Shown here: in pieces, positions 18,795 to 41,177 of the stretch
Numbering within the stretch: position 1 is the first letter of the stretch
Layout of the letters: every line of letters starts with the position of its first letter
Virus record (IMG/VR): IMGVR_UViG_3300017963_000190
Location: 1 to 64,000 of that record
DNA length: 64,000 bases
Reading direction: 5' to 3' (one strand)
Made by a program: the position numbers and the translations under genes
Notes under the pieces: generated by a model
What the model was told of the DNA's origin: nothing
The model's database searches: none
What the model saw: the letters and a program-made list of their open reading frames with translations, nothing else

Positions 18795-19243
18795 GCACAC
18801 ATAGAAAATACTTCCACGCCGCGCTGCTGAACGTCGCTTATTGGTCCCGTGAATTTCTGGAGTCTGTACTCCTGGTGATCTGCACCTGGGATAGTGCCTG
18901 GTTAATTGAATCGATGTAATGTCGCTGGAAGTATTTTACAAGATTAGGTGTGGATTCACTACAACTGATTTTTGCTTTCTTGGTGAGTGAAGTGGTGAAG
19001 GGATTACGTGTGATGTTGTCGTATATGGTGTGAGTCCCGCTGAAGTTGTGCCTCAGAAACCCGGTTCCGCTCTATACAAAATCGGCTTTTTGCGCAGGAA
19101 TGATGTGGGCTGCTGGAGCTCGAACCCTTACAGCACGTAGGTGAACGGTCCACACAAAGCTGGAGTCGGGATGATGGATGAGATTACTTGGTCCTGAGGT
19201 GCCTTGGGTTCCACCGAAGCTCTGTCATTATGCCCCAGAGCCT

Positions 19244-19350
19244 GGATCCCCTATGGATCCCCAAAATAGGCCCTTTTTGGCCATATATAGCCCTTTTACC
19301 CCCTATATAGGGGATCCATAGCGTGTTTGGGGCCTATTTGGGGATCAGAT
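19244..19350. repeat. nested inverted repeats / GGATCC cluster
   Basis: GATCCCCAAAATAGGCCC ... GGGCCTATTTGGGGATC; palindrome CCCCTATATAGGGG at 19300-19313. Confidence 0.75.
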
Positions 19351-19491
19351 CCCCTTTTATACCCCTAAAAAGGTCGGTGTTTAAGTGTGAAAATGGTGCT
19401 ACACTGTGCATATGGATCCCCAATGGAGTAGATCCGTGTACCGATACTGCACCGTTTGTGCGCAAGATTCATTCCATTCACTGGATCCCAT

Positions 19492-19571
19492 GTGACAGCA
19501 ATGTTACAGATGAGTGAATTGTGCGTAACATGGTTGTCACACTTGTAACCTAAGCGTCACACTCCTGTCAC
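19492..19571. repeat. helically phased GTNAC array
   Basis: GTNAC at 19492, 19503, 19525, 19536, 19545, 19556, 19567 and GTGAA at 19514. Confidence 0.6.
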
Positions 19572-20039
19572 ATTACACAACGAGTGAAGCACGACACAGG
19601 GAGTGAACCGTGTCAGTAACGTGTAGTGTACACTTACAGTGACCCCACACGCACACACGTATTACCTTGCAGGTCGCATGCCAACTAGGATCCCCTCGGA
19701 GGCTTCGTGTGCTGGCATGTGTGCGTGTCTATTCTTACACGCTTCACAGTTACCTCGGCTCCGGCCGGGCAGCTACGCCGGAGCCTGCGAGCTAGCAGCC
19801 ATGTGTCACGAACGGACACGGTGTGCGACAAGTAGATCTTGATATTCCTCATGCCCTCATGATACTGATGTGGAGTTACGTGTCAAATTCCGTGCACGTT
19901 CACATAAATTGCAATTAAATTCATTTCGGCTATTGACTCCGGAGCAATGATGGTAACGCGTGAGGGTTTAACCGTGTGCACGCAACGCGGAACGGATCCC
20001 CAATCATTAGGGATCCGTTCGCTGGGGATCGTGGCGGGA

Positions 20040-20339: not shown

Positions 20340-20560
20340 TTTATCCTCCGGGGGCGGGGTGGTTAGTATCTCCGCCCGTAGATATAAGGTAAGCATCATT
20401 GATACGTTGTCAATATGTGTGCACGAAAAAGAAAAAGAAATTAAATGCGCTTTGCCTATTGCCTTTTCGGGAAAGATGGTAACGCGTGAGGGTTTAACCC
20501 TGTGCACGTGCACGAAAAAGCCCCGAGCGTTTCCACCCGGGGCTTGCAGGAATCTCGGGG

Positions 20561-23227: not shown

Positions 23228-23451
23228 GTTTTGTCTCCGGTTTGTTGGTTCTCGGTCCGTGCAAATAAGATAAGCACTATTGACAGCGACACAAGGACCA
23301 CTTTGCATTTTCTCAATCTTTTTTCGGCACGGAGTTTGCAACGCGCGCACCTTATATACTGGCAGGGTTAAACCCTCACGCGTTACCATCATATTGACGA
23401 TGTCAAGTATTACAGGCAAGAAAAGCGATTTTTCTTTTTTCGCACAAAAGC

Positions 23452-23479
23452 TTGACTCTGAAACAAGGCTGCTTATATT
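23452..23479 (+). promoter_or_regulatory. plus-strand promoter of the inverted cassette
   Basis: TTGACT-N16-TATATT; RBS CCGGAGGTAA at 23511-23520. Confidence 0.75.
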
Positions 23480-23525
23480 CTATGTACGGCGCCGCAAGTT
23501 AGGGGCCGCACCGGAGGTAAAAGTG

Positions 23526-23561
23526 ATGCGAGATTGGATGTGGACCTGGCTAGGTCGGTAA
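23526..23561 (+). CDS. 11-aa Trp-rich mini-ORF MRDWMWTWLGR
   Basis: consensus phage promoter and RBS directly upstream. Confidence 0.5.
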   Translation: MRDWMWTWLGR

Positions 23562-23858
23562 ACTGGCTCACGGTGTTTACGCTAGGGCAGCGGCCACCGT
23601 GCTACTTAACCGGCAGCGTAGGGATCCAACGCGTAAAGGGATCCCGCGGTACCAGCGCTGAGACCGGCAACGTCAAAGCCCCCAACCTATTAACGCCAGG
23701 ACGCTAGCCACCTGGAGCATTCCGCTCCCGTTTCCCTTTAGGGGTGTAGGTTAAACCCTCACGCGTTACCACGAAAATTACGTTGTCAAGTATTACAGGC
23801 AAAAATAAAGGGCGCCCTTTCAGACGCCCTCAAATGCCCCGTGTTAGGAGCAAGGGTG

Positions 23859-29318: not shown

Positions 29319-29653
29319 TGCTTTACCTCCGGGTTAGTGCGGGGTGGTTAGCTTCGCTGGGTTTCTCCCGCCGCAAACAAAACATAAGCACTATTGACAG
29401 CGAAACAAGGCGAAAAAGAAAAATAATTAAATGCGCTTTAGGGGTTGACCGCGGCGAAAAGATGGTAACGCGTGAGGGTTTAACCCTTGACGTCCCGCGG
29501 GGCGAGGGGGCGCGGCCGGATCCCCTGGGCCTAATCCTGGTAATCGGGTAGGGTTAACGGATCCCCTTTGGTGTTAGTCCTAGTATCTCATTTTGTATAG
29601 AGGGTGGATCCCCAATGGGGATCCAGGCAGGTTTTGTATAGAGGCCCTTTGGC

Positions 29654-29821
29654 CTATCGGGCAGCTGAGGGCATGATCACCAGGTCGTCGGGCAGGTGAT
29701 CCCCGTAGGGATCCATGAGACGGAGCGCTTGTTTCACCGCCTGGCGCTGTCGCTGCTTGAAACGTCGCCGGGCCTTACCCTTCCCGTTGCCATTGTACTC
29801 TTTTCGATTCGTGCGGGCCAT
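29654..29821 (-). CDS. small basic protein (not in ORF track)
   Basis: 55 aa MARTNRKEY..; CCGGAGGTAAG RBS; resembles 20040-20339. Confidence 0.7.
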   Translation of the reverse strand: MARTNRKEYNGNGKGKARRRFKQRQRQAVKQALRLMDPYGDHLPDDLVIMPSAAR

Positions 29822-29847
29822 TTTCTTACCTCCGGTTGGTTGTTTGG

Positions 29848-30033
29848 TTATTTACGGAGCCCTTCTAGCCATTCCCGATCCAGCTCGTCACGGGCCACGG
29901 CCATTTCCAGGAAATCCCGGAAAGCGTCCGGCGCACCTTGGTTGTCGATGTATTCCAGGGCCAGCGCTAGCGCATCCTCACAGGATAACCCATGGTATTC
30001 TGTGTATTGATCCATGATCATTTCGGCGCTCAT
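29848..30033 (-). CDS. hypothetical protein
   Basis: AAGGAG RBS. Confidence 0.7.
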   Translation of the reverse strand: MSAEMIMDQYTEYHGLSCEDALALALEYIDNQGAPDAFRDFLEMAVARDELDREWLEGLRK

Positions 30034-30038
30034 AGCCT

Positions 30039-30299
30039 TTACTCCTTATCCACCGTTAGTGCCAGCGCCACTTCGCGGCCGTAGCCGGTGAGCCGCATCT
30101 TGATCGGGCCAAAGCTGCCCTCTTTGCGGTGGGCCAGGCCGTTGTTCACCAGGAAATCCGCCTGGTACTCTGCCAGCTCGTGGTGCGAGTAGAAAAACGC
30201 GGGCTTGCACGCGCGCTCATACTCGCCCATTTCCCGCAGGACCTTTGCCGCCGCGGTATTGCAGATCTCGTTGGCCAGTTTCGTTGCTGCCTTGCTCAT
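30039..30299 (-). CDS. hypothetical protein (possible winged helix)
   Basis: LVNNGL..LTGYG. Confidence 0.75.
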   Translation of the reverse strand: MSKAATKLANEICNTAAAKVLREMGEYERACKPAFFYSHHELAEYQADFLVNNGLAHRKEGSFGPIKMRLTGYGREVALALTVDKE

Positions 30300-30360
30300 T
30301 TGCTTTGCCTCCGGTTGAACGTACCAAGAATATAATCACCCTTGATACGTTGTCAATGGG

Positions 30361-30735
30361 CTAGTAGGGCGTATTCTCGAAAACCTCGGGGCCGCCGTCC
30401 GAATCCAAGCTGATGGCCCCTGGAGCCACCGCCCGCGCCAGGGCGAGAATGGAGACCACGACGGCATCGTAGGGGCGATAGGCTGTCTTGCAGAACGAGA
30501 ATCCCGACCCCTCACGTTCCAGGCAGAACGTCTCGTAATCGTCATCCTCTGCCCCGTTGAGCCAGATCTTGTCTTTGGATACCTCCGGCTTGGATCCACT
30601 ATTGGCCAAGCCATCGGCCAGCTTGATCCTGTCATTCCCGGCGGCCTCGATGACATACTTGGCGCCGTCCATGATGCGCGTCCACTGCTTTTCGGTGAAA
30701 GGCTTGCTCTGTTCCCAGTAATGTGTGTAACCCAT
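30361..30735 (-). CDS. conserved phage protein (MGYTHYW family)
   Basis: MGYTHYW..FCKT..PYD..SDG. Confidence 0.8.
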   Translation of the reverse strand: MGYTHYWEQSKPFTEKQWTRIMDGAKYVIEAAGNDRIKLADGLANSGSKPEVSKDKIWLNGAEDDDYETFCLEREGSGFSFCKTAYRPYDAVVVSILALARAVAPGAISLDSDGGPEVFENTPY

Positions 30736-30900
30736 TTGCTTGTCTCCGGTTGGTTAGGGTTTCTTGCTTCGTGTGTAAAAGATAAGTCGCTTTGTTACGA
30801 TGTCAATATAGACAAGCGCAAAAAGAAAAACAAATAAAACGCACGCAGGAGGTTGACCGAGCTCGAAAGATGGTAACGCGTGAGGGTTAAACCTAGGTAG

Positions 30901-30996
30901 GAAAGTGAGCAGCCGAGCAAGCGACCTTCCCGGTATGCCCTAGGCTGTGCACCGCTAAGGGCTGCGTGGGGTCGGCGGATTGCTCGGTCTACTCTA
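30901..30996 (-). ncRNA. putative rod-like small RNA
   Basis: own promoter at 31003-31030, no ORF or RBS, terminal stem GAGTAGACCGAGCAA / TTGCTCGGCTGCTC. Confidence 0.55.
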
Positions 30997-31033
30997 ACCG
31001 TTATGATAAGCGGTTATTATACGTTGTCAAGTT

Positions 31034-31453
31034 TTACAGATACCCCAGGGCACGCCCCCACCGCTTCACACCGTGGTGCTCCGCCTTGGGAATGCAGTCG
31101 GCGATAGCTTCGGCGATGGCCATACCGCGATCCTGGGCGACCTTGACGCGCTCGTTATCGTACCCGTCGCTTTCCGCGTCCAAGTAGAACGTGGCGCTAA
31201 AGGGCATACACTGATGTTCACCCCGAGGGGAACACAGGAAAGCAGCCAGACGCCACGCGTAATAGATGAGCCCTTGACGGTTGCGCTTGTCCTTGGCCAC
31301 CTTGTAGGGCTGCTTAGGGCTGGACGCGCGCAGACGGCCCTTGTTCTTCCCACGGGATACCAAAGCCCCCTGGGCAATGAAGAAATCCTCGGCGCTCAGC
31401 TTGGCCCTGAGGGCTTCCACGTTGACCATTGGCATTTGACTGGTGAAATACAT
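31034..31453 (-). CDS. hypothetical protein
   Basis: CCGGAGGTAG RBS. Confidence 0.8.
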   Translation of the reverse strand: MYFTSQMPMVNVEALRAKLSAEDFFIAQGALVSRGKNKGRLRASSPKQPYKVAKDKRNRQGLIYYAWRLAAFLCSPRGEHQCMPFSATFYLDAESDGYDNERVKVAQDRGMAIAEAIADCIPKAEHHGVKRWGRALGYL

Positions 31454-31633
31454 CTGGCTACCTCCGGTTTAGCGGGGTTGGTTTAGTTTCTCCCGCTGTG
31501 AAAACAAATATAAGCACGCTTGATACGGTGTCAATATGGACAAGCGAAAAAGAAAAAAGAAATAAAGCGCACGATGCCCCTTGCCAAATTCGTTTTCGTG
31601 GTAACGCGTGAAGGTTAAACCCTACCCGCAGAC

Positions 31634-31706
31634 AAAAACGGACCGGCTAGCGTAACTGCCACGGGGCAAGGAATAGGACCCCGCTTGAAACCGCTAGCCG
31701 GTCCGT
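31634..31706 (-). terminator. intrinsic terminator with large structured loop
   Basis: 15-bp stem ACGGACCGGCTAGCG plus U-tract. Confidence 0.65.
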
Positions 31707-31715
31707 GCGCGCTTT

Positions 31716-31979
31716 TTAGAGCGCCTTGGCTGTGGCGCTTTCCAGCTCCACCAAGTCTGCCATGACGGCTTCCGAGTCGCCCCCGAAACCGGAGATGGTA
31801 ACCCAGCCACCCTTGCCCCGGAGCACCCAGCACCCGTTACGGGTTACCTCGGGCGTGCCCCCGTGGTATCTGTCATTGGGCCGCAAGAGGGCGTCGATCA
31901 GCTCCCGCTTGGCCTGGACCTTCACGGCCGTGTCCGAGATAACGGTGAATTTGACTTCGTTGGTTGTCGTGGTGGCCAT
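31716..31979 (-). CDS. hypothetical protein
   Basis: CCGGAGGTAAG RBS. Confidence 0.8.
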   Translation of the reverse strand: MATTTTNEVKFTVISDTAVKVQAKRELIDALLRPNDRYHGGTPEVTRNGCWVLRGKGGWVTISGFGGDSEAVMADLVELESATAKAL

Positions 31980-32165
31980 TGTCTTACCTCCGGCGGGGCT
32001 GGTTGGTTTATTTTCTCCCGCGTTAGATACAAGATAAACACTATTGACAACGTAACAAGGGGCAAAAGGAAGAAAATCGAAAATAGTTTTTACGAAAAAG
32101 TGACCTGTAAGACTTGACGCGATGGATTTAATGGTAACGCGTGAGGGTTTAACCCTTTATGGGGT

Positions 32166-40286: not shown

Positions 40287-41177
40287 TTAGGCTGCTAACT
40301 CAGTTGCCAGCTCCGCTTCTGTTGTGGCTACCTCCCGCAGGTCCCGCACCCCGAAAAATTCCTTGGCCTTTTTGCGCACGGTAGCGTCTACGTATTGGAC
40401 CGCTTGTCGACTGCAGCCGGTGAGATCTGCTACCTCTTGAAGGGTGAGGGGATCATCGGAAAGTACCCGTAGGTCTAACACGATCCGTTGCTTTGGGGAA
40501 AGGGTCTGGGCGAACTCGTTGAACATCTGGCGCAGCTCTGATTTCCATTCCACGCGGCGGTAGACTTGCTCAGGGGTGGGGATGTTGCCTTGTAGAGTAT
40601 CGCCAAAGGTGACTCTATGCTCTCGCCTGGAGTAGGATGCGGTAGATACCTCATTTTTACCGCGCAATCGAACAAGCATAGCCTTGACGGTGGGGATGTC
40701 TACGTCAAGCGCTTTGGCTAAGCGCTCCGGGGTTGCTTCGATACCCTGGGCTTCTAGGGCAGCTTGCGTCTTAGACAGACCCCACAGACATTTACGCTGG
40801 CCTCCCGTGGTACCCGTGCGCACAATAAACAGGTTATCTCGAAAGGCTTCGAGCACGCGAGCCCTAACCCACTGCATAGCGTATGTGGTAAACCGCGTGC
40901 CCTTGTCTGTGTCGAATCTGTCGATGGATTCCATGAGGCCCACGTTGCCCGCTTGGATCAGGTCTAGCAGGGTTTCCTTGCAGCCGTTGCTATACCGCTT
41001 GGCTACCTTCACGACCAGGCGTAGGTTGTGCTCCGCGAGCCGTTGCCTAGCGCGTTGGTTGCCGTCGGTGGCCCGCTCTAGCAGCGCCCTTTCATCCTCG
41101 GCGGATAGCAAGGGGAATTTGCCCGCGGCTTGCATGTAAAAATTGAGAGTATCGAGATCGGTTGAAGTATTGGCCAT
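40287..41177 (-). CDS. RNA polymerase sigma factor, sigma-70 family (RpoH/sigma32-like)
   Basis: PLLSAEDE, HNLRLVVKVA, DLIQAGNVGL, RFTTYA.QW, RpoH-box-like IVRTGTTGGQRK, TLQEVA region 4. Confidence 0.92.
   Translation of the reverse strand: MANTSTDLDTLNFYMQAAGKFPLLSAEDERALLERATDGNQRARQRLAEHNLRLVVKVAKRYSNGCKETLLDLIQAGNVGLMESIDRFDTDKGTRFTTYAMQWVRARVLEAFRDNLFIVRTGTTGGQRKCLWGLSKTQAALEAQGIEATPERLAKALDVDIPTVKAMLVRLRGKNEVSTASYSRREHRVTFGDTLQGNIPTPEQVYRRVEWKSELRQMFNEFAQTLSPKQRIVLDLRVLSDDPLTLQEVADLTGCSRQAVQYVDATVRKKAKEFFGVRDLREVATTEAELATELAA

What the first reader, a model, noticed from the sequence alone, without database searches (positions are those of the whole stretch)
30901..31030. RNA-only transcription unit: ~95-nt rod-like RNA inside the cassette array
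Seen: a consensus promoter (TTGACA-N16-TATCAT) reads into sequence with no RBS or ORF. It folds as nested stems GAGTAGACCGAGCAA/TTGCTCGGCTGCTC, CGACC/GGTCG and GCCCTTAG/CTAGGGC with a central bubble, and ends just before element copy 30871. Inference: an early ncRNA, such as a protein decoy, antitoxin mimic or 6S-like open-promoter mimic.
Basis: partly seen in the sequence, partly recalled or inferred. Interest (0 to 1): 0.62.

Follow-up and report, generated by a model that had tools for sequence, protein, structure and literature searches.

The report
Promoter firing into a long hairpin
In the early-gene array of an uncultured jumbo phage, a strong bacterial-type promoter reads straight into an 88-base hairpin with no gene behind it, so a short hairpin RNA is probably made, but the hairpin sits where the upstream gene's terminator belongs and nothing shows a special function.

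Summary
On the minus strand, TTGACA (31030-31025), a 16-nt spacer and TATCAT (31008-31003) form a promoter. It belongs to the array's own promoter family: it scores 22.9 bits on a matrix built from 30 other copies, and only 34 of 520,058 genome windows score as high. About 7 nt downstream begins an 88-nt hairpin (30994-30907) with 28 pairs, -44 kcal/mol and z -3.35. It has no credible RBS or ORF, and it ends 13 nt before the 23-nt element copy at 30893-30871.

The hairpin occupies the slot that terminator hairpins fill in most other cassettes, and it is the only 3' structure available to the upstream 139-aa gene. Its U-tail is weak. It has no Rfam match, no paralogue and no counterpart in seven related metagenomic contigs. 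No RNA data exist for this phage.

ORF-less promoter-to-terminator mini-units do recur in this genome (P42474, P42242) and in relatives, so a short primary transcript is plausible. The 6S-like, antitoxin-mimic and tRNA-like readings fail their tests.

Best reading: a dual-use 3'-end hairpin with a real promoter upstream. It would give a hairpin-only RNA plus read-through into the 124-aa gene. This is an ordinary phage sRNA candidate of modest interest.

The parts
31034..31453 (-). Upstream gene of 139 aa with no known function. Its stop codon lies 3 nt before the -35 hexamer.
   Evidence: ORF with GGAGG RBS. It has 7 metagenomic homologues at 59-69% identity and a weak match to Salicola phage SCTP-2 gp302.
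31003..31030 (-). Sigma-70-type early promoter P31030: TTGACA, 16-nt spacer, TATCAT. The predicted TSS is at about 30996-30994.
   Evidence: 11 of 12 consensus positions, 22.9 bits on the family PWM, and a family-like spacer.
30996..31015 (-). Small imperfect dyad (AACCG..CGGTT arms) overlapping the -10 hexamer and the TSS. On read-through mRNA from the 139-aa gene it would form a small first hairpin.
   Evidence: It is unique in the genome, but the count is within chance (1 seen, 1.45 expected), so I make no operator claim.
30907..30994 (-). 88-nt rod-like hairpin. It has a 14-bp outer stem with one bulged A, weakly paired internal loops, an apical GCCCU/AGGGC stem, and a loop containing the palindrome GUGCAC.
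30894..30906 (-). 13-nt tail ACUUUCCUACCUA, a weak U-tract.
   Evidence: T-score 0.98, against 2.6-4.3 for canonical terminators of the same array.
30852..30893 (-). Copy of the array's 23-nt element (30893-30871), a 13-nt spacer and the GTCAAC box (30857-30852). It marks the upstream border of the next cassette.
30779..30806 (-). Proximal promoter P30806 of the next cassette (TTGACA, 16-nt spacer, TATCTT), preceded by a T-rich UP-like stretch.
30361..30735 (-). Downstream gene of 124 aa with no known function. Transcripts from P31030 would reach it if the hairpin does not terminate.

Best explanation
The 88-nt hairpin is first of all the 3'-end structure of the 139-aa cassette: a terminator, a barrier to 3' exonucleases, and possibly an RNase III site. 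A genuine copy of the phage's sigma-70-type early promoter sits between that gene's stop codon and the hairpin.

Two RNAs therefore share the hairpin. The 139-aa mRNA ends or is trimmed there. Host RNA polymerase starting at about 30996-30994 makes a primary transcript that is essentially the hairpin alone, roughly 90-105 nt, whenever termination or processing occurs at the weak ACUUUCCU tail.

Because that tail is weak, part of the P31030 transcripts should read on through the 23-nt element and P30806 into the 124-aa gene. P31030 would then also act as a distal second promoter for that gene.

Shown here: the promoter's family membership, the hairpin, the absence of an ORF, and the hairpin's position in the terminator slot. 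Inferred: promoter activity, the TSS, partial termination, and the stability of the hairpin RNA. No trans-acting function is required by this reading.
For: - The promoter is a family member beyond its two hexamers.
- A promoter abutting a stop codon is normal for this phage; P46719 does the same.
- The hairpin starts at about +1 to +3 of the predicted transcript.
- It lies 13 nt upstream of the 23-nt element. Most of the other element copies also have a hairpin just upstream, ending 4-30 nt away by the automated scan.
- The 139-aa gene has no other 3' structure.
- In all seven relatives the homologous gene is followed directly by hairpins in that same slot.
- Long nested terminators exist next door, at about 31700-31631 and upstream of element 38640.
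- The tail score of 0.98 predicts leaky termination.
- ORF-less promoter-to-terminator units recur in this genome and in relatives.
- Short promoter-proximal RNAs made by premature termination are documented in virulent phages (PMC10914365).
Against: - No transcript data exist.
- The U-tract is poorer than in canonical terminators, so the hairpin may not terminate at all.
- The hairpin is about twice as long as the terminators that follow the homologous gene in relatives. None of those relatives has a promoter in front of the terminator. The arrangement is therefore a lineage-specific novelty that could have been selected for the RNA itself.
- No covariation test is possible, because only one sequence is known.
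Confidence: 0.45

Rival explanations
1. This is the first reader's view: a free-standing, trans-acting early small RNA. P31030 exists to make an abundant, very stable hairpin RNA of about 95 nt. The RNA would act on a host or phage factor, for example as a decoy for a dsRNA-binding enzyme or sensor.
For: - The promoter is near-consensus.
- The hairpin is far longer than termination needs and replaced the ancestral short terminator.
- The family has other ORF-less early units. One of them, from P42474, carries a perfect anti-RBS stretch.
- The structure z-score is better on the gene strand, -3.35 against -2.02.
Against: - No Rfam family matches.
- There is no homologue in about 44 kb of relatives' arrays, no paralogue, and no match in phage or plasmid collections.
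- Complementarity to phage translation-initiation regions shows no excess.
- An exact-pattern scan of 185,579 species genomes found no host look-alike of the apical hairpin.
- The weak U-tail gives no defined 3' end.
Confidence: 0.2
2. The hairpin is a leader or processing element. P31030 would be a distal promoter of the 124-aa gene. The hairpin would be a 5'-terminal stabiliser or an RNase III processing site, as in the T7 early region, where strong host promoters are followed by the R0.3 hairpin (my own knowledge of T7).
For: - The weak U-tail favours read-through.
- The helix is irregular, 28 bp long, with internal loops, and begins at the 5' end of the transcript.
- Many 5'UTRs of the array also begin with a stem-loop.
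- In the folded long leader the RBS of the 124-aa gene is mostly paired (unpaired probability 0.19). In the short leader from P30806 the figure is 0.86. This hints that the two promoters could give differently translated mRNAs, but it is a weak, long-range prediction.
Against: - The gene already has its own full promoter module 200 nt downstream.
- The hairpin's spacing to the element matches the terminator slot, not the 5'UTR layout of other cassettes.
- Duplex energy between the hairpin and this gene's initiation region is not significant: 9% of shuffles do as well.
Confidence: 0.2
3. The unit is a relic. A former cassette lost its 5'UTR and ORF by deletion, leaving its promoter fused to its terminator. 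Any RNA made would be a by-product without function.
For: - Cassette content after the 139-aa gene differs in every relative, so the array turns over quickly.
- The unit is unique and unconserved.
Against: - The stems are almost perfect: a 14-bp outer stem with one bulge and one G-U pair.
- The promoter is among the best in the array.
- No remnant of a UTR, RBS or ORF can be aligned.
Confidence: 0.1
4. The plus strand or the DNA itself is the functional form. Examples would be an antisense transcript starting from the reverse reading of the neighbouring element (TTGAC, 13 nt, TGGTAAC), or a cruciform.
For: - The plus strand folds equally well, -46.2 kcal/mol.
- The element can be read as a promoter-like site on the opposite strand. 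Four copies in the array are inverted.
Against: - The z-score is poorer on the plus strand.
- No consensus promoter lies on the plus strand here.
- All genes and family promoters nearby are on the minus strand.
Confidence: 0.05

Closest known systems
Promoter-proximal (5'UTR-derived) ncRNA candidates of virulent phages, made by premature termination (29 candidates in six Pseudomonas phages; PMC10914365)
   Same: It has its own promoter, a short structured RNA, no ORF with a Shine-Dalgarno sequence, and lies upstream of a protein gene in a dense phage transcription map.
   Different: Those candidates were seen as transcripts and are conserved within genera. Here there are no RNA data and no conservation. 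The hairpin also serves the upstream gene and is separated from the downstream gene by a full second promoter module.
Intrinsic terminators, and 3'UTR-derived sRNAs that have their own promoter and share the mRNA's terminator (the DapZ/MicL type; my own knowledge)
   Same: A GC-rich hairpin at the end of a gene, directly before the next unit. A promoter just upstream of it would give an RNA that consists mainly of the terminator.
   Different: The U-tract is weak (4 U in 8, T-score 0.98). The hairpin is 88 nt with internal loops. The promoter lies after the stop codon, not inside the gene. No seed region or target was detected.
RNase III processing hairpins of the phage T7 early region (R0.3, R1.1 and others; my own knowledge)
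   Same: An irregular double-stranded hairpin with internal loops. It lies behind strong host-type promoters and between early genes.
   Different: No sequence similarity was tested or expected, and cleavage was not tested. T7 sites are shorter (about 50-60 nt) and are not followed by a new promoter module.
6S RNA
   Different: It is about half the length. No match to any Rfam 6S model appears even at E<=10. The central 'bubble' is partly paired in the MFE structure.

Membership tests
Intrinsic (Rho-independent) terminator | Stable GC-rich hairpin at the 3' end of a transcription unit | tested here: met
   The hairpin is 88 nt, -44 kcal/mol, and starts 40 nt after the stop codon of the 139-aa gene. 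It ends 13 nt before the next cassette's element.
Intrinsic (Rho-independent) terminator | U-rich tract directly after the stem | tested here: not met
   The tail ACUUUCCU has 4 U in 8 and a T-score of 0.98. Canonical terminators of the same array and the two mini-units score 2.6-4.3. About half of the cassette-end hairpins are equally poor or poorer, so this phage may not rely on U-tracts.
6S RNA | Match to an Rfam 6S covariance model | tested here: not met
   No family reached its gathering score in the whole window. At E<=10 on 30700-31150 the only match is a chance hit to UCA1.
6S RNA | Length of about 150-200 nt with a large open central bubble | tested here: not met
   The hairpin is 88 nt, at most about 105 nt with its tail. 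The internal loops are 5-7 nt in the MFE structure.
Type III antitoxin RNA (ToxI-like) or a phage mimic of it | Tandem direct repeats of about 34-36 nt | tested here: not met
   No tandem repeat was found in 30700-31200, even at minimum score 30.
tRNA, tmRNA or tRNA-like | Cloverleaf detectable by ARAGORN | tested here: not met
   No gene was found in the window. None was found with relaxed thresholds on 30700-31200. The same tool finds tRNA-Asn and tRNA-His in the relative L128.
Phage promoter-proximal ncRNA (as in PMC10914365) | Own promoter or TSS | tested here: met
   Met by sequence only: 11 of 12 consensus positions and 22.9 bits on the family PWM. Promoter activity was not measured.
Phage promoter-proximal ncRNA (as in PMC10914365) | [quoted passage not shown] | tested here: met
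   Only a 19-codon GTG frame without an SD, and a 41-codon TTG frame behind GGGAAGG that runs through the repeated element.
Phage promoter-proximal ncRNA (as in PMC10914365) | Discrete short transcript observed | not testable with these tools
   No RNA run holds this phage. The two DNA runs give identical contigs.
RNase III processing site of the T7 early type | Irregular helix of about 20 bp or more with an internal loop, lying in an early transcript | tested here: met
   28 pairs with a 14-bp lower stem and internal loops.
RNase III processing site of the T7 early type | Cleavage by RNase III | not testable with these tools
   This needs an enzyme assay or 5'/3'-end mapping.
Conserved structured RNA family (any) | Homologues with compensatory base changes | tested here: not met
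   A single-sequence covariance model finds only itself in the genome and in 11 relatives' loci. BLAST of the unit against relatives matches the promoter only.

The most novel reading that the evidence does not exclude
The hairpin RNA is a dedicated early product. It would be an abundant double-stranded RNA rod that starts with a 5' triphosphate and acts in trans, for example by occupying host RNase III or an RNA-sensing defence protein. It would be one of several small early RNAs that this group of sigma-factor-carrying jumbo phages uses, alongside RNAs that carry anti-RBS sequences.
Probability: 0.12. Interest if true: 0.6.

Novelty: new member of a known kind. Interest (0 to 1): 0.3.

Why it matters
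Taken alone, this is one more unverified small-RNA candidate in an uncultured phage. Its value lies in the context. This jumbo phage has no RNA polymerase of its own that I could detect, but it carries two sigma factors. It runs an array of about 40 early cassettes built from the same parts: a hairpin, a 23-nt element, an UP-like stretch, a host-type promoter, and a 5'UTR stem with a strong RBS. Several cassettes carry RNA instead of protein. If the short RNAs are real, the array would be a compact natural system for studying how a phage uses promoter-terminator mini-units and anti-RBS sequences during host takeover. It would also be a source of well-insulated promoter and terminator parts.

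Tried and rejected
- Rfam, whole window at gathering scores and 30700-31150 at E<=10: nothing but a chance lncRNA hit.
- ARAGORN at default and relaxed settings: no tRNA or tmRNA.
- Paralogue search by BLAST and by covariance model in the 260-kb genome: only the unit itself.
- First IMG/VR pattern scan with a rod-arm motif: too loose, chance hits only, discarded.
- IMG/VR scans for the 23-nt element and for the element plus GTCAA box: no related virus record.
- Protein-guided search for relatives: seven lineages found in metagenomes, none in IMG/VR. None has the hairpin.
- Alignment of the unit with the other mini-units (L123, L126, U1, U2): not significant, z -1.1 to 1.6.
- Homology of the 3' half of the hairpin to the relatives' terminator (shared GGGAA, UUGCU, ACUUU): suggested by MAFFT but too weak to claim.
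- Anti-RBS or sRNA-target idea: duplex energies of four hairpin segments against 390 translation-initiation regions equal those of shuffles.
- Operator idea for the dyad over the -10 hexamer: unique, but within chance.
- MITE idea: no other copy and no target-site duplication.
- Phage and plasmid collections in distant BLAST mode: no match.
- Exact-pattern scan of GTDB species genomes for the apical hairpin: none.
- Sequencing runs: only two DNA runs, with identical contigs, zero variants in 29458-32154 and no RNA.
- Relatives cannot be drawn for a virus record.
- Function of the flanking proteins: no Pfam, PHROG or PDB lead.
- Not needed: the large representative protein search, structure prediction and complex prediction.
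- No alternative genetic code was used.

Full report
CONTEXT. The window is the first 64 kb of a 260-kb IMG/VR virus record, which CheckV rates as about 74% complete. The same sequence was seen in one sediment run and one seawater run, and their contigs are identical. Nearly all genes lie on the minus strand.

The phage has no detectable T7-like or multisubunit RNA polymerase. It encodes two sigma factors, one inside the window at 40287-41177. Early transcription should therefore depend on the host polymerase.

From about 19.9 to 49.8 kb the genome is an array of small, mostly orphan genes. Read on the minus strand, each class-A cassette has the same order of parts:
- a hairpin;
- a 23-nt element, GGTTWAACCCTCACGCGTTACCA, present in 21-22 copies found only in this region of the 260-kb record;
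- a 13-nt spacer and a GTCAAC box;
- a T-rich stretch;
- a sigma-70-like promoter with a conserved spacer;
- a 5'UTR with a stem and a CCGGAGG ribosome-binding site;
- the gene.

From 42 to 64 kb a second promoter class (TTGACA, 16 nt, TATACT) sits directly between genes, without the element.

THE OBSERVATION. Three nt after the stop codon of the 139-aa gene (31453-31034) lies TTGACA, a 16-nt spacer and TATCAT (31030-31003). It matches 11 of 12 consensus positions. On a weight matrix built from 30 other promoters of the array it scores 22.9 bits, and only 34 of 520,058 genome windows score as high. The spacer and flanks alone, without the hexamers, fall in the top 0.05%. It is therefore a true copy of the phage's promoter family, not a chance match. 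Abutting a stop codon is normal for the second promoter class; P46719 does the same.

The predicted start at 30996-30994 falls at the foot of an 88-nt hairpin (30994-30907). The hairpin has 28 pairs and -44 kcal/mol. A 106-nt fold gives z -3.35, with 0 of 200 shuffles as good. The outer and apical stems have pair probabilities of 0.9-1.0. No credible ORF or RBS follows the promoter, and a leaderless reading is impossible because there is no start codon at the TSS. The hairpin ends 13 nt before the element copy at 30893-30871.

WHAT THE HAIRPIN'S PLACE SAYS. Most of the other element copies have a hairpin just upstream, ending 4-30 nt away by the automated scan. Several are classical terminators with U-runs, upstream of the element copies at 20477, 27528, 31599 and 38640. 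Two of those, at 31599 and 38640, are long nested hairpins much like this one. The hairpin of the finding occupies exactly that slot. It is also the only 3' structure the 139-aa gene has.

Its tail, ACUUUCCU, is weak. It scores 0.98, against 2.6-4.3 for the canonical terminators. About half of the cassette-end hairpins are as poor or poorer.

RELATIVES. The 139-aa protein has homologues at 59-69% identity on metagenomic contigs. Seven lineages could be read. They share the same architecture:
- a terminator;
- a variant of the element, with the CACGCGT core conserved (CACGCGTTACCA in most), a 13-nt spacer and GTCAA;
- a TTGACA promoter;
- a sigma-factor gene, a Mg-chelatase-like gene and a RadC gene nearby.

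In all seven, the gene is followed by short hairpins, in most a small one plus a terminator with a U-run. None has a promoter before them, and none has the long hairpin. A covariance model of the hairpin finds nothing, and BLAST matches only promoters. The promoter-plus-rod arrangement is therefore specific to this phage. No covariation test is possible.

ARE RNA-ONLY UNITS PLAUSIBLE HERE? Yes.
- In the window, P42474 is followed by about 185 nt and a canonical terminator.
- P42242 is followed by about 75 nt and a canonical terminator. These two units hold only 15- and 8-codon frames.
- In L123 and L126 the unit right after the 139-aa cassette is also a promoter, a short structured RNA and a terminator, with no called gene.
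- In L128 the corresponding unit is a promoter followed by tRNA-Asn and tRNA-His.
- Short promoter-proximal RNAs produced by premature termination are documented in several virulent phages (PMC10914365).

WHAT IT IS NOT.
- No Rfam family matches.
- It is not a tRNA or tmRNA.
- It has no tandem repeats, so it is not ToxI-like.
- It has no paralogue and no match in the phage or plasmid collections.
- The apical hairpin has no exact look-alike in the GTDB species genomes.
- Complementarity to the phage's translation-initiation regions shows no excess.
- The dyad over the -10 hexamer is within chance.
- Both strands fold about equally well, with a better z-score on the gene strand.

MOST LIKELY MECHANISM (confidence about 0.45). 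The hairpin is the 3'-end structure of the 139-aa mRNA, and a real early promoter lies in front of it. Host polymerase starting at about 30996 makes a transcript that is little more than the hairpin. Such an RNA, closed at its 5' end, should be stable. Because the U-tail is weak, a fraction reads on through the element and P30806 into the 124-aa gene.

The rivals are:
- a dedicated trans-acting RNA (0.2);
- a leader or RNase III processing site for the 124-aa gene (0.2). In the long leader that gene's RBS is predicted to be mostly paired, 0.19 unpaired against 0.86 in the short leader, but this long-range prediction is weak;
- a relic of a cassette that lost its ORF (0.1);
- a plus-strand or DNA-level role (0.05).

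These readings are not fully exclusive. The chance that some discrete hairpin RNA is made is about one half by my estimate.

VERDICT. The idea of an RNA-only unit is reasonable. The proposed functions are unsupported or fail their tests, and the terminator alternative stands. The finding is a new member of a known kind, a phage small-RNA candidate or dual-use terminator, of modest interest.

No alternative genetic code was used. The large representative protein search was not used.

Noticed in passing
window 19951-49812 (22 sites listed): A 23-nt element, GGTTWAACCCTCACGCGTTACCA, is followed at a fixed 13 nt by GTCAAC/G. It has 21-22 copies, all confined to the early array, against 0.02 expected by chance. 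It is conserved in relatives (CACGCGT core, CACGCGTTACCA in most, 13 nt, GTCAA). Most copies lie upstream of a cassette's promoter in the gene's orientation; four are inverted (23366, 23749, 26468, 41305). Read on the opposite strand it is TTGAC, 13 nt, TGGTAAC. In the inverted copies that reading points towards the genes, including the sigma-factor gene. From memory, its first half resembles the T3 RNA polymerase promoter core (TTAACCCTCAC), but no such polymerase was found. Its function is open: a phage-sigma promoter, a regulator binding site or an insulator.
   Followed up: partly
window 42474-42250 and 42242-42128, minus strand: Two further ORF-less units, each with a consensus promoter and a canonical terminator. 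P42474 gives about 185 nt and carries CUUACCUCCGG, the exact complement of the phage RBS context CCGGAGGUAAG, just 5' of its terminator. P42242 gives about 75 nt. These are better small-RNA candidates than the finding itself.
   Followed up: partly
L123 2689, L125 4571, L126 6467 and 6723, L128 2430, L133 2951 and 3207; similar loops in L138 and L141: In relatives, the loops of terminator hairpins carry a conserved (A)AUUGCUACCUCC. This is the reverse complement of those phages' own RBS plus spacer, GGAGGUAGCAA. It could be an anti-RBS display on 3' ends. Its meaning is unknown.
   Followed up: partly
window 23366-23771, plus strand: An inverted cassette on the opposite strand. It has an element, an UP-like stretch, promoter P23452, a 5'UTR and a strong RBS, but only a 12-codon Trp-rich ORF (MRDWMWTWLGR). 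About 200 nt of untranslated sequence follow, then a second element copy. It lies in a 630-nt gap between minus-strand genes.
   Followed up: no
window about 18800-19900: A 1.1-kb ORF-free region at the boundary where GC content steps from about 0.50 to 0.56. It is rich in GGATCC and GTGTGACA-like repeats and is entered by promoter P19886 (TTGACA, 16 nt, TATCAT). GGATCC occurs 162 times in the genome against about 64 expected. It could be an origin, an end region or a long ncRNA.
   Followed up: no
window 40287-41177 (minus strand); genome about 185.5 kb: There are two phage-encoded sigma-70-family factors, one inside the early array. No phage RNA polymerase was detected (PF00940, PF00562, PF00623). 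The relatives' arrays also carry the sigma gene, next to Mg-chelatase-like AAA+ and RadC genes.
   Followed up: partly
L128 2585-2734: In one relative, the unit after the 139-aa cassette is a promoter followed by tRNA-Asn(GTT) and tRNA-His(GTG), embedded in the leader of a small basic protein gene. The window itself has no tRNA.
   Followed up: yes
window 25596-25310, minus strand; L125 about 4640; L138 about 1335: Probable leaderless genes, with an ATG only about 6-11 nt after the -10 hexamer. In the window this is an ORF of about 90 codons. In the relatives it is a small Arg/Lys-rich protein (MSRRRKRKQQ...).
   Followed up: no
window about 31700-31631, minus strand: The neighbouring cassette ends in a nested hairpin of about 70 nt (15-bp outer stem, 7-bp inner stem) followed by UUUUUG. 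It is a long compound terminator that resembles the finding's hairpin in design.
   Followed up: yes
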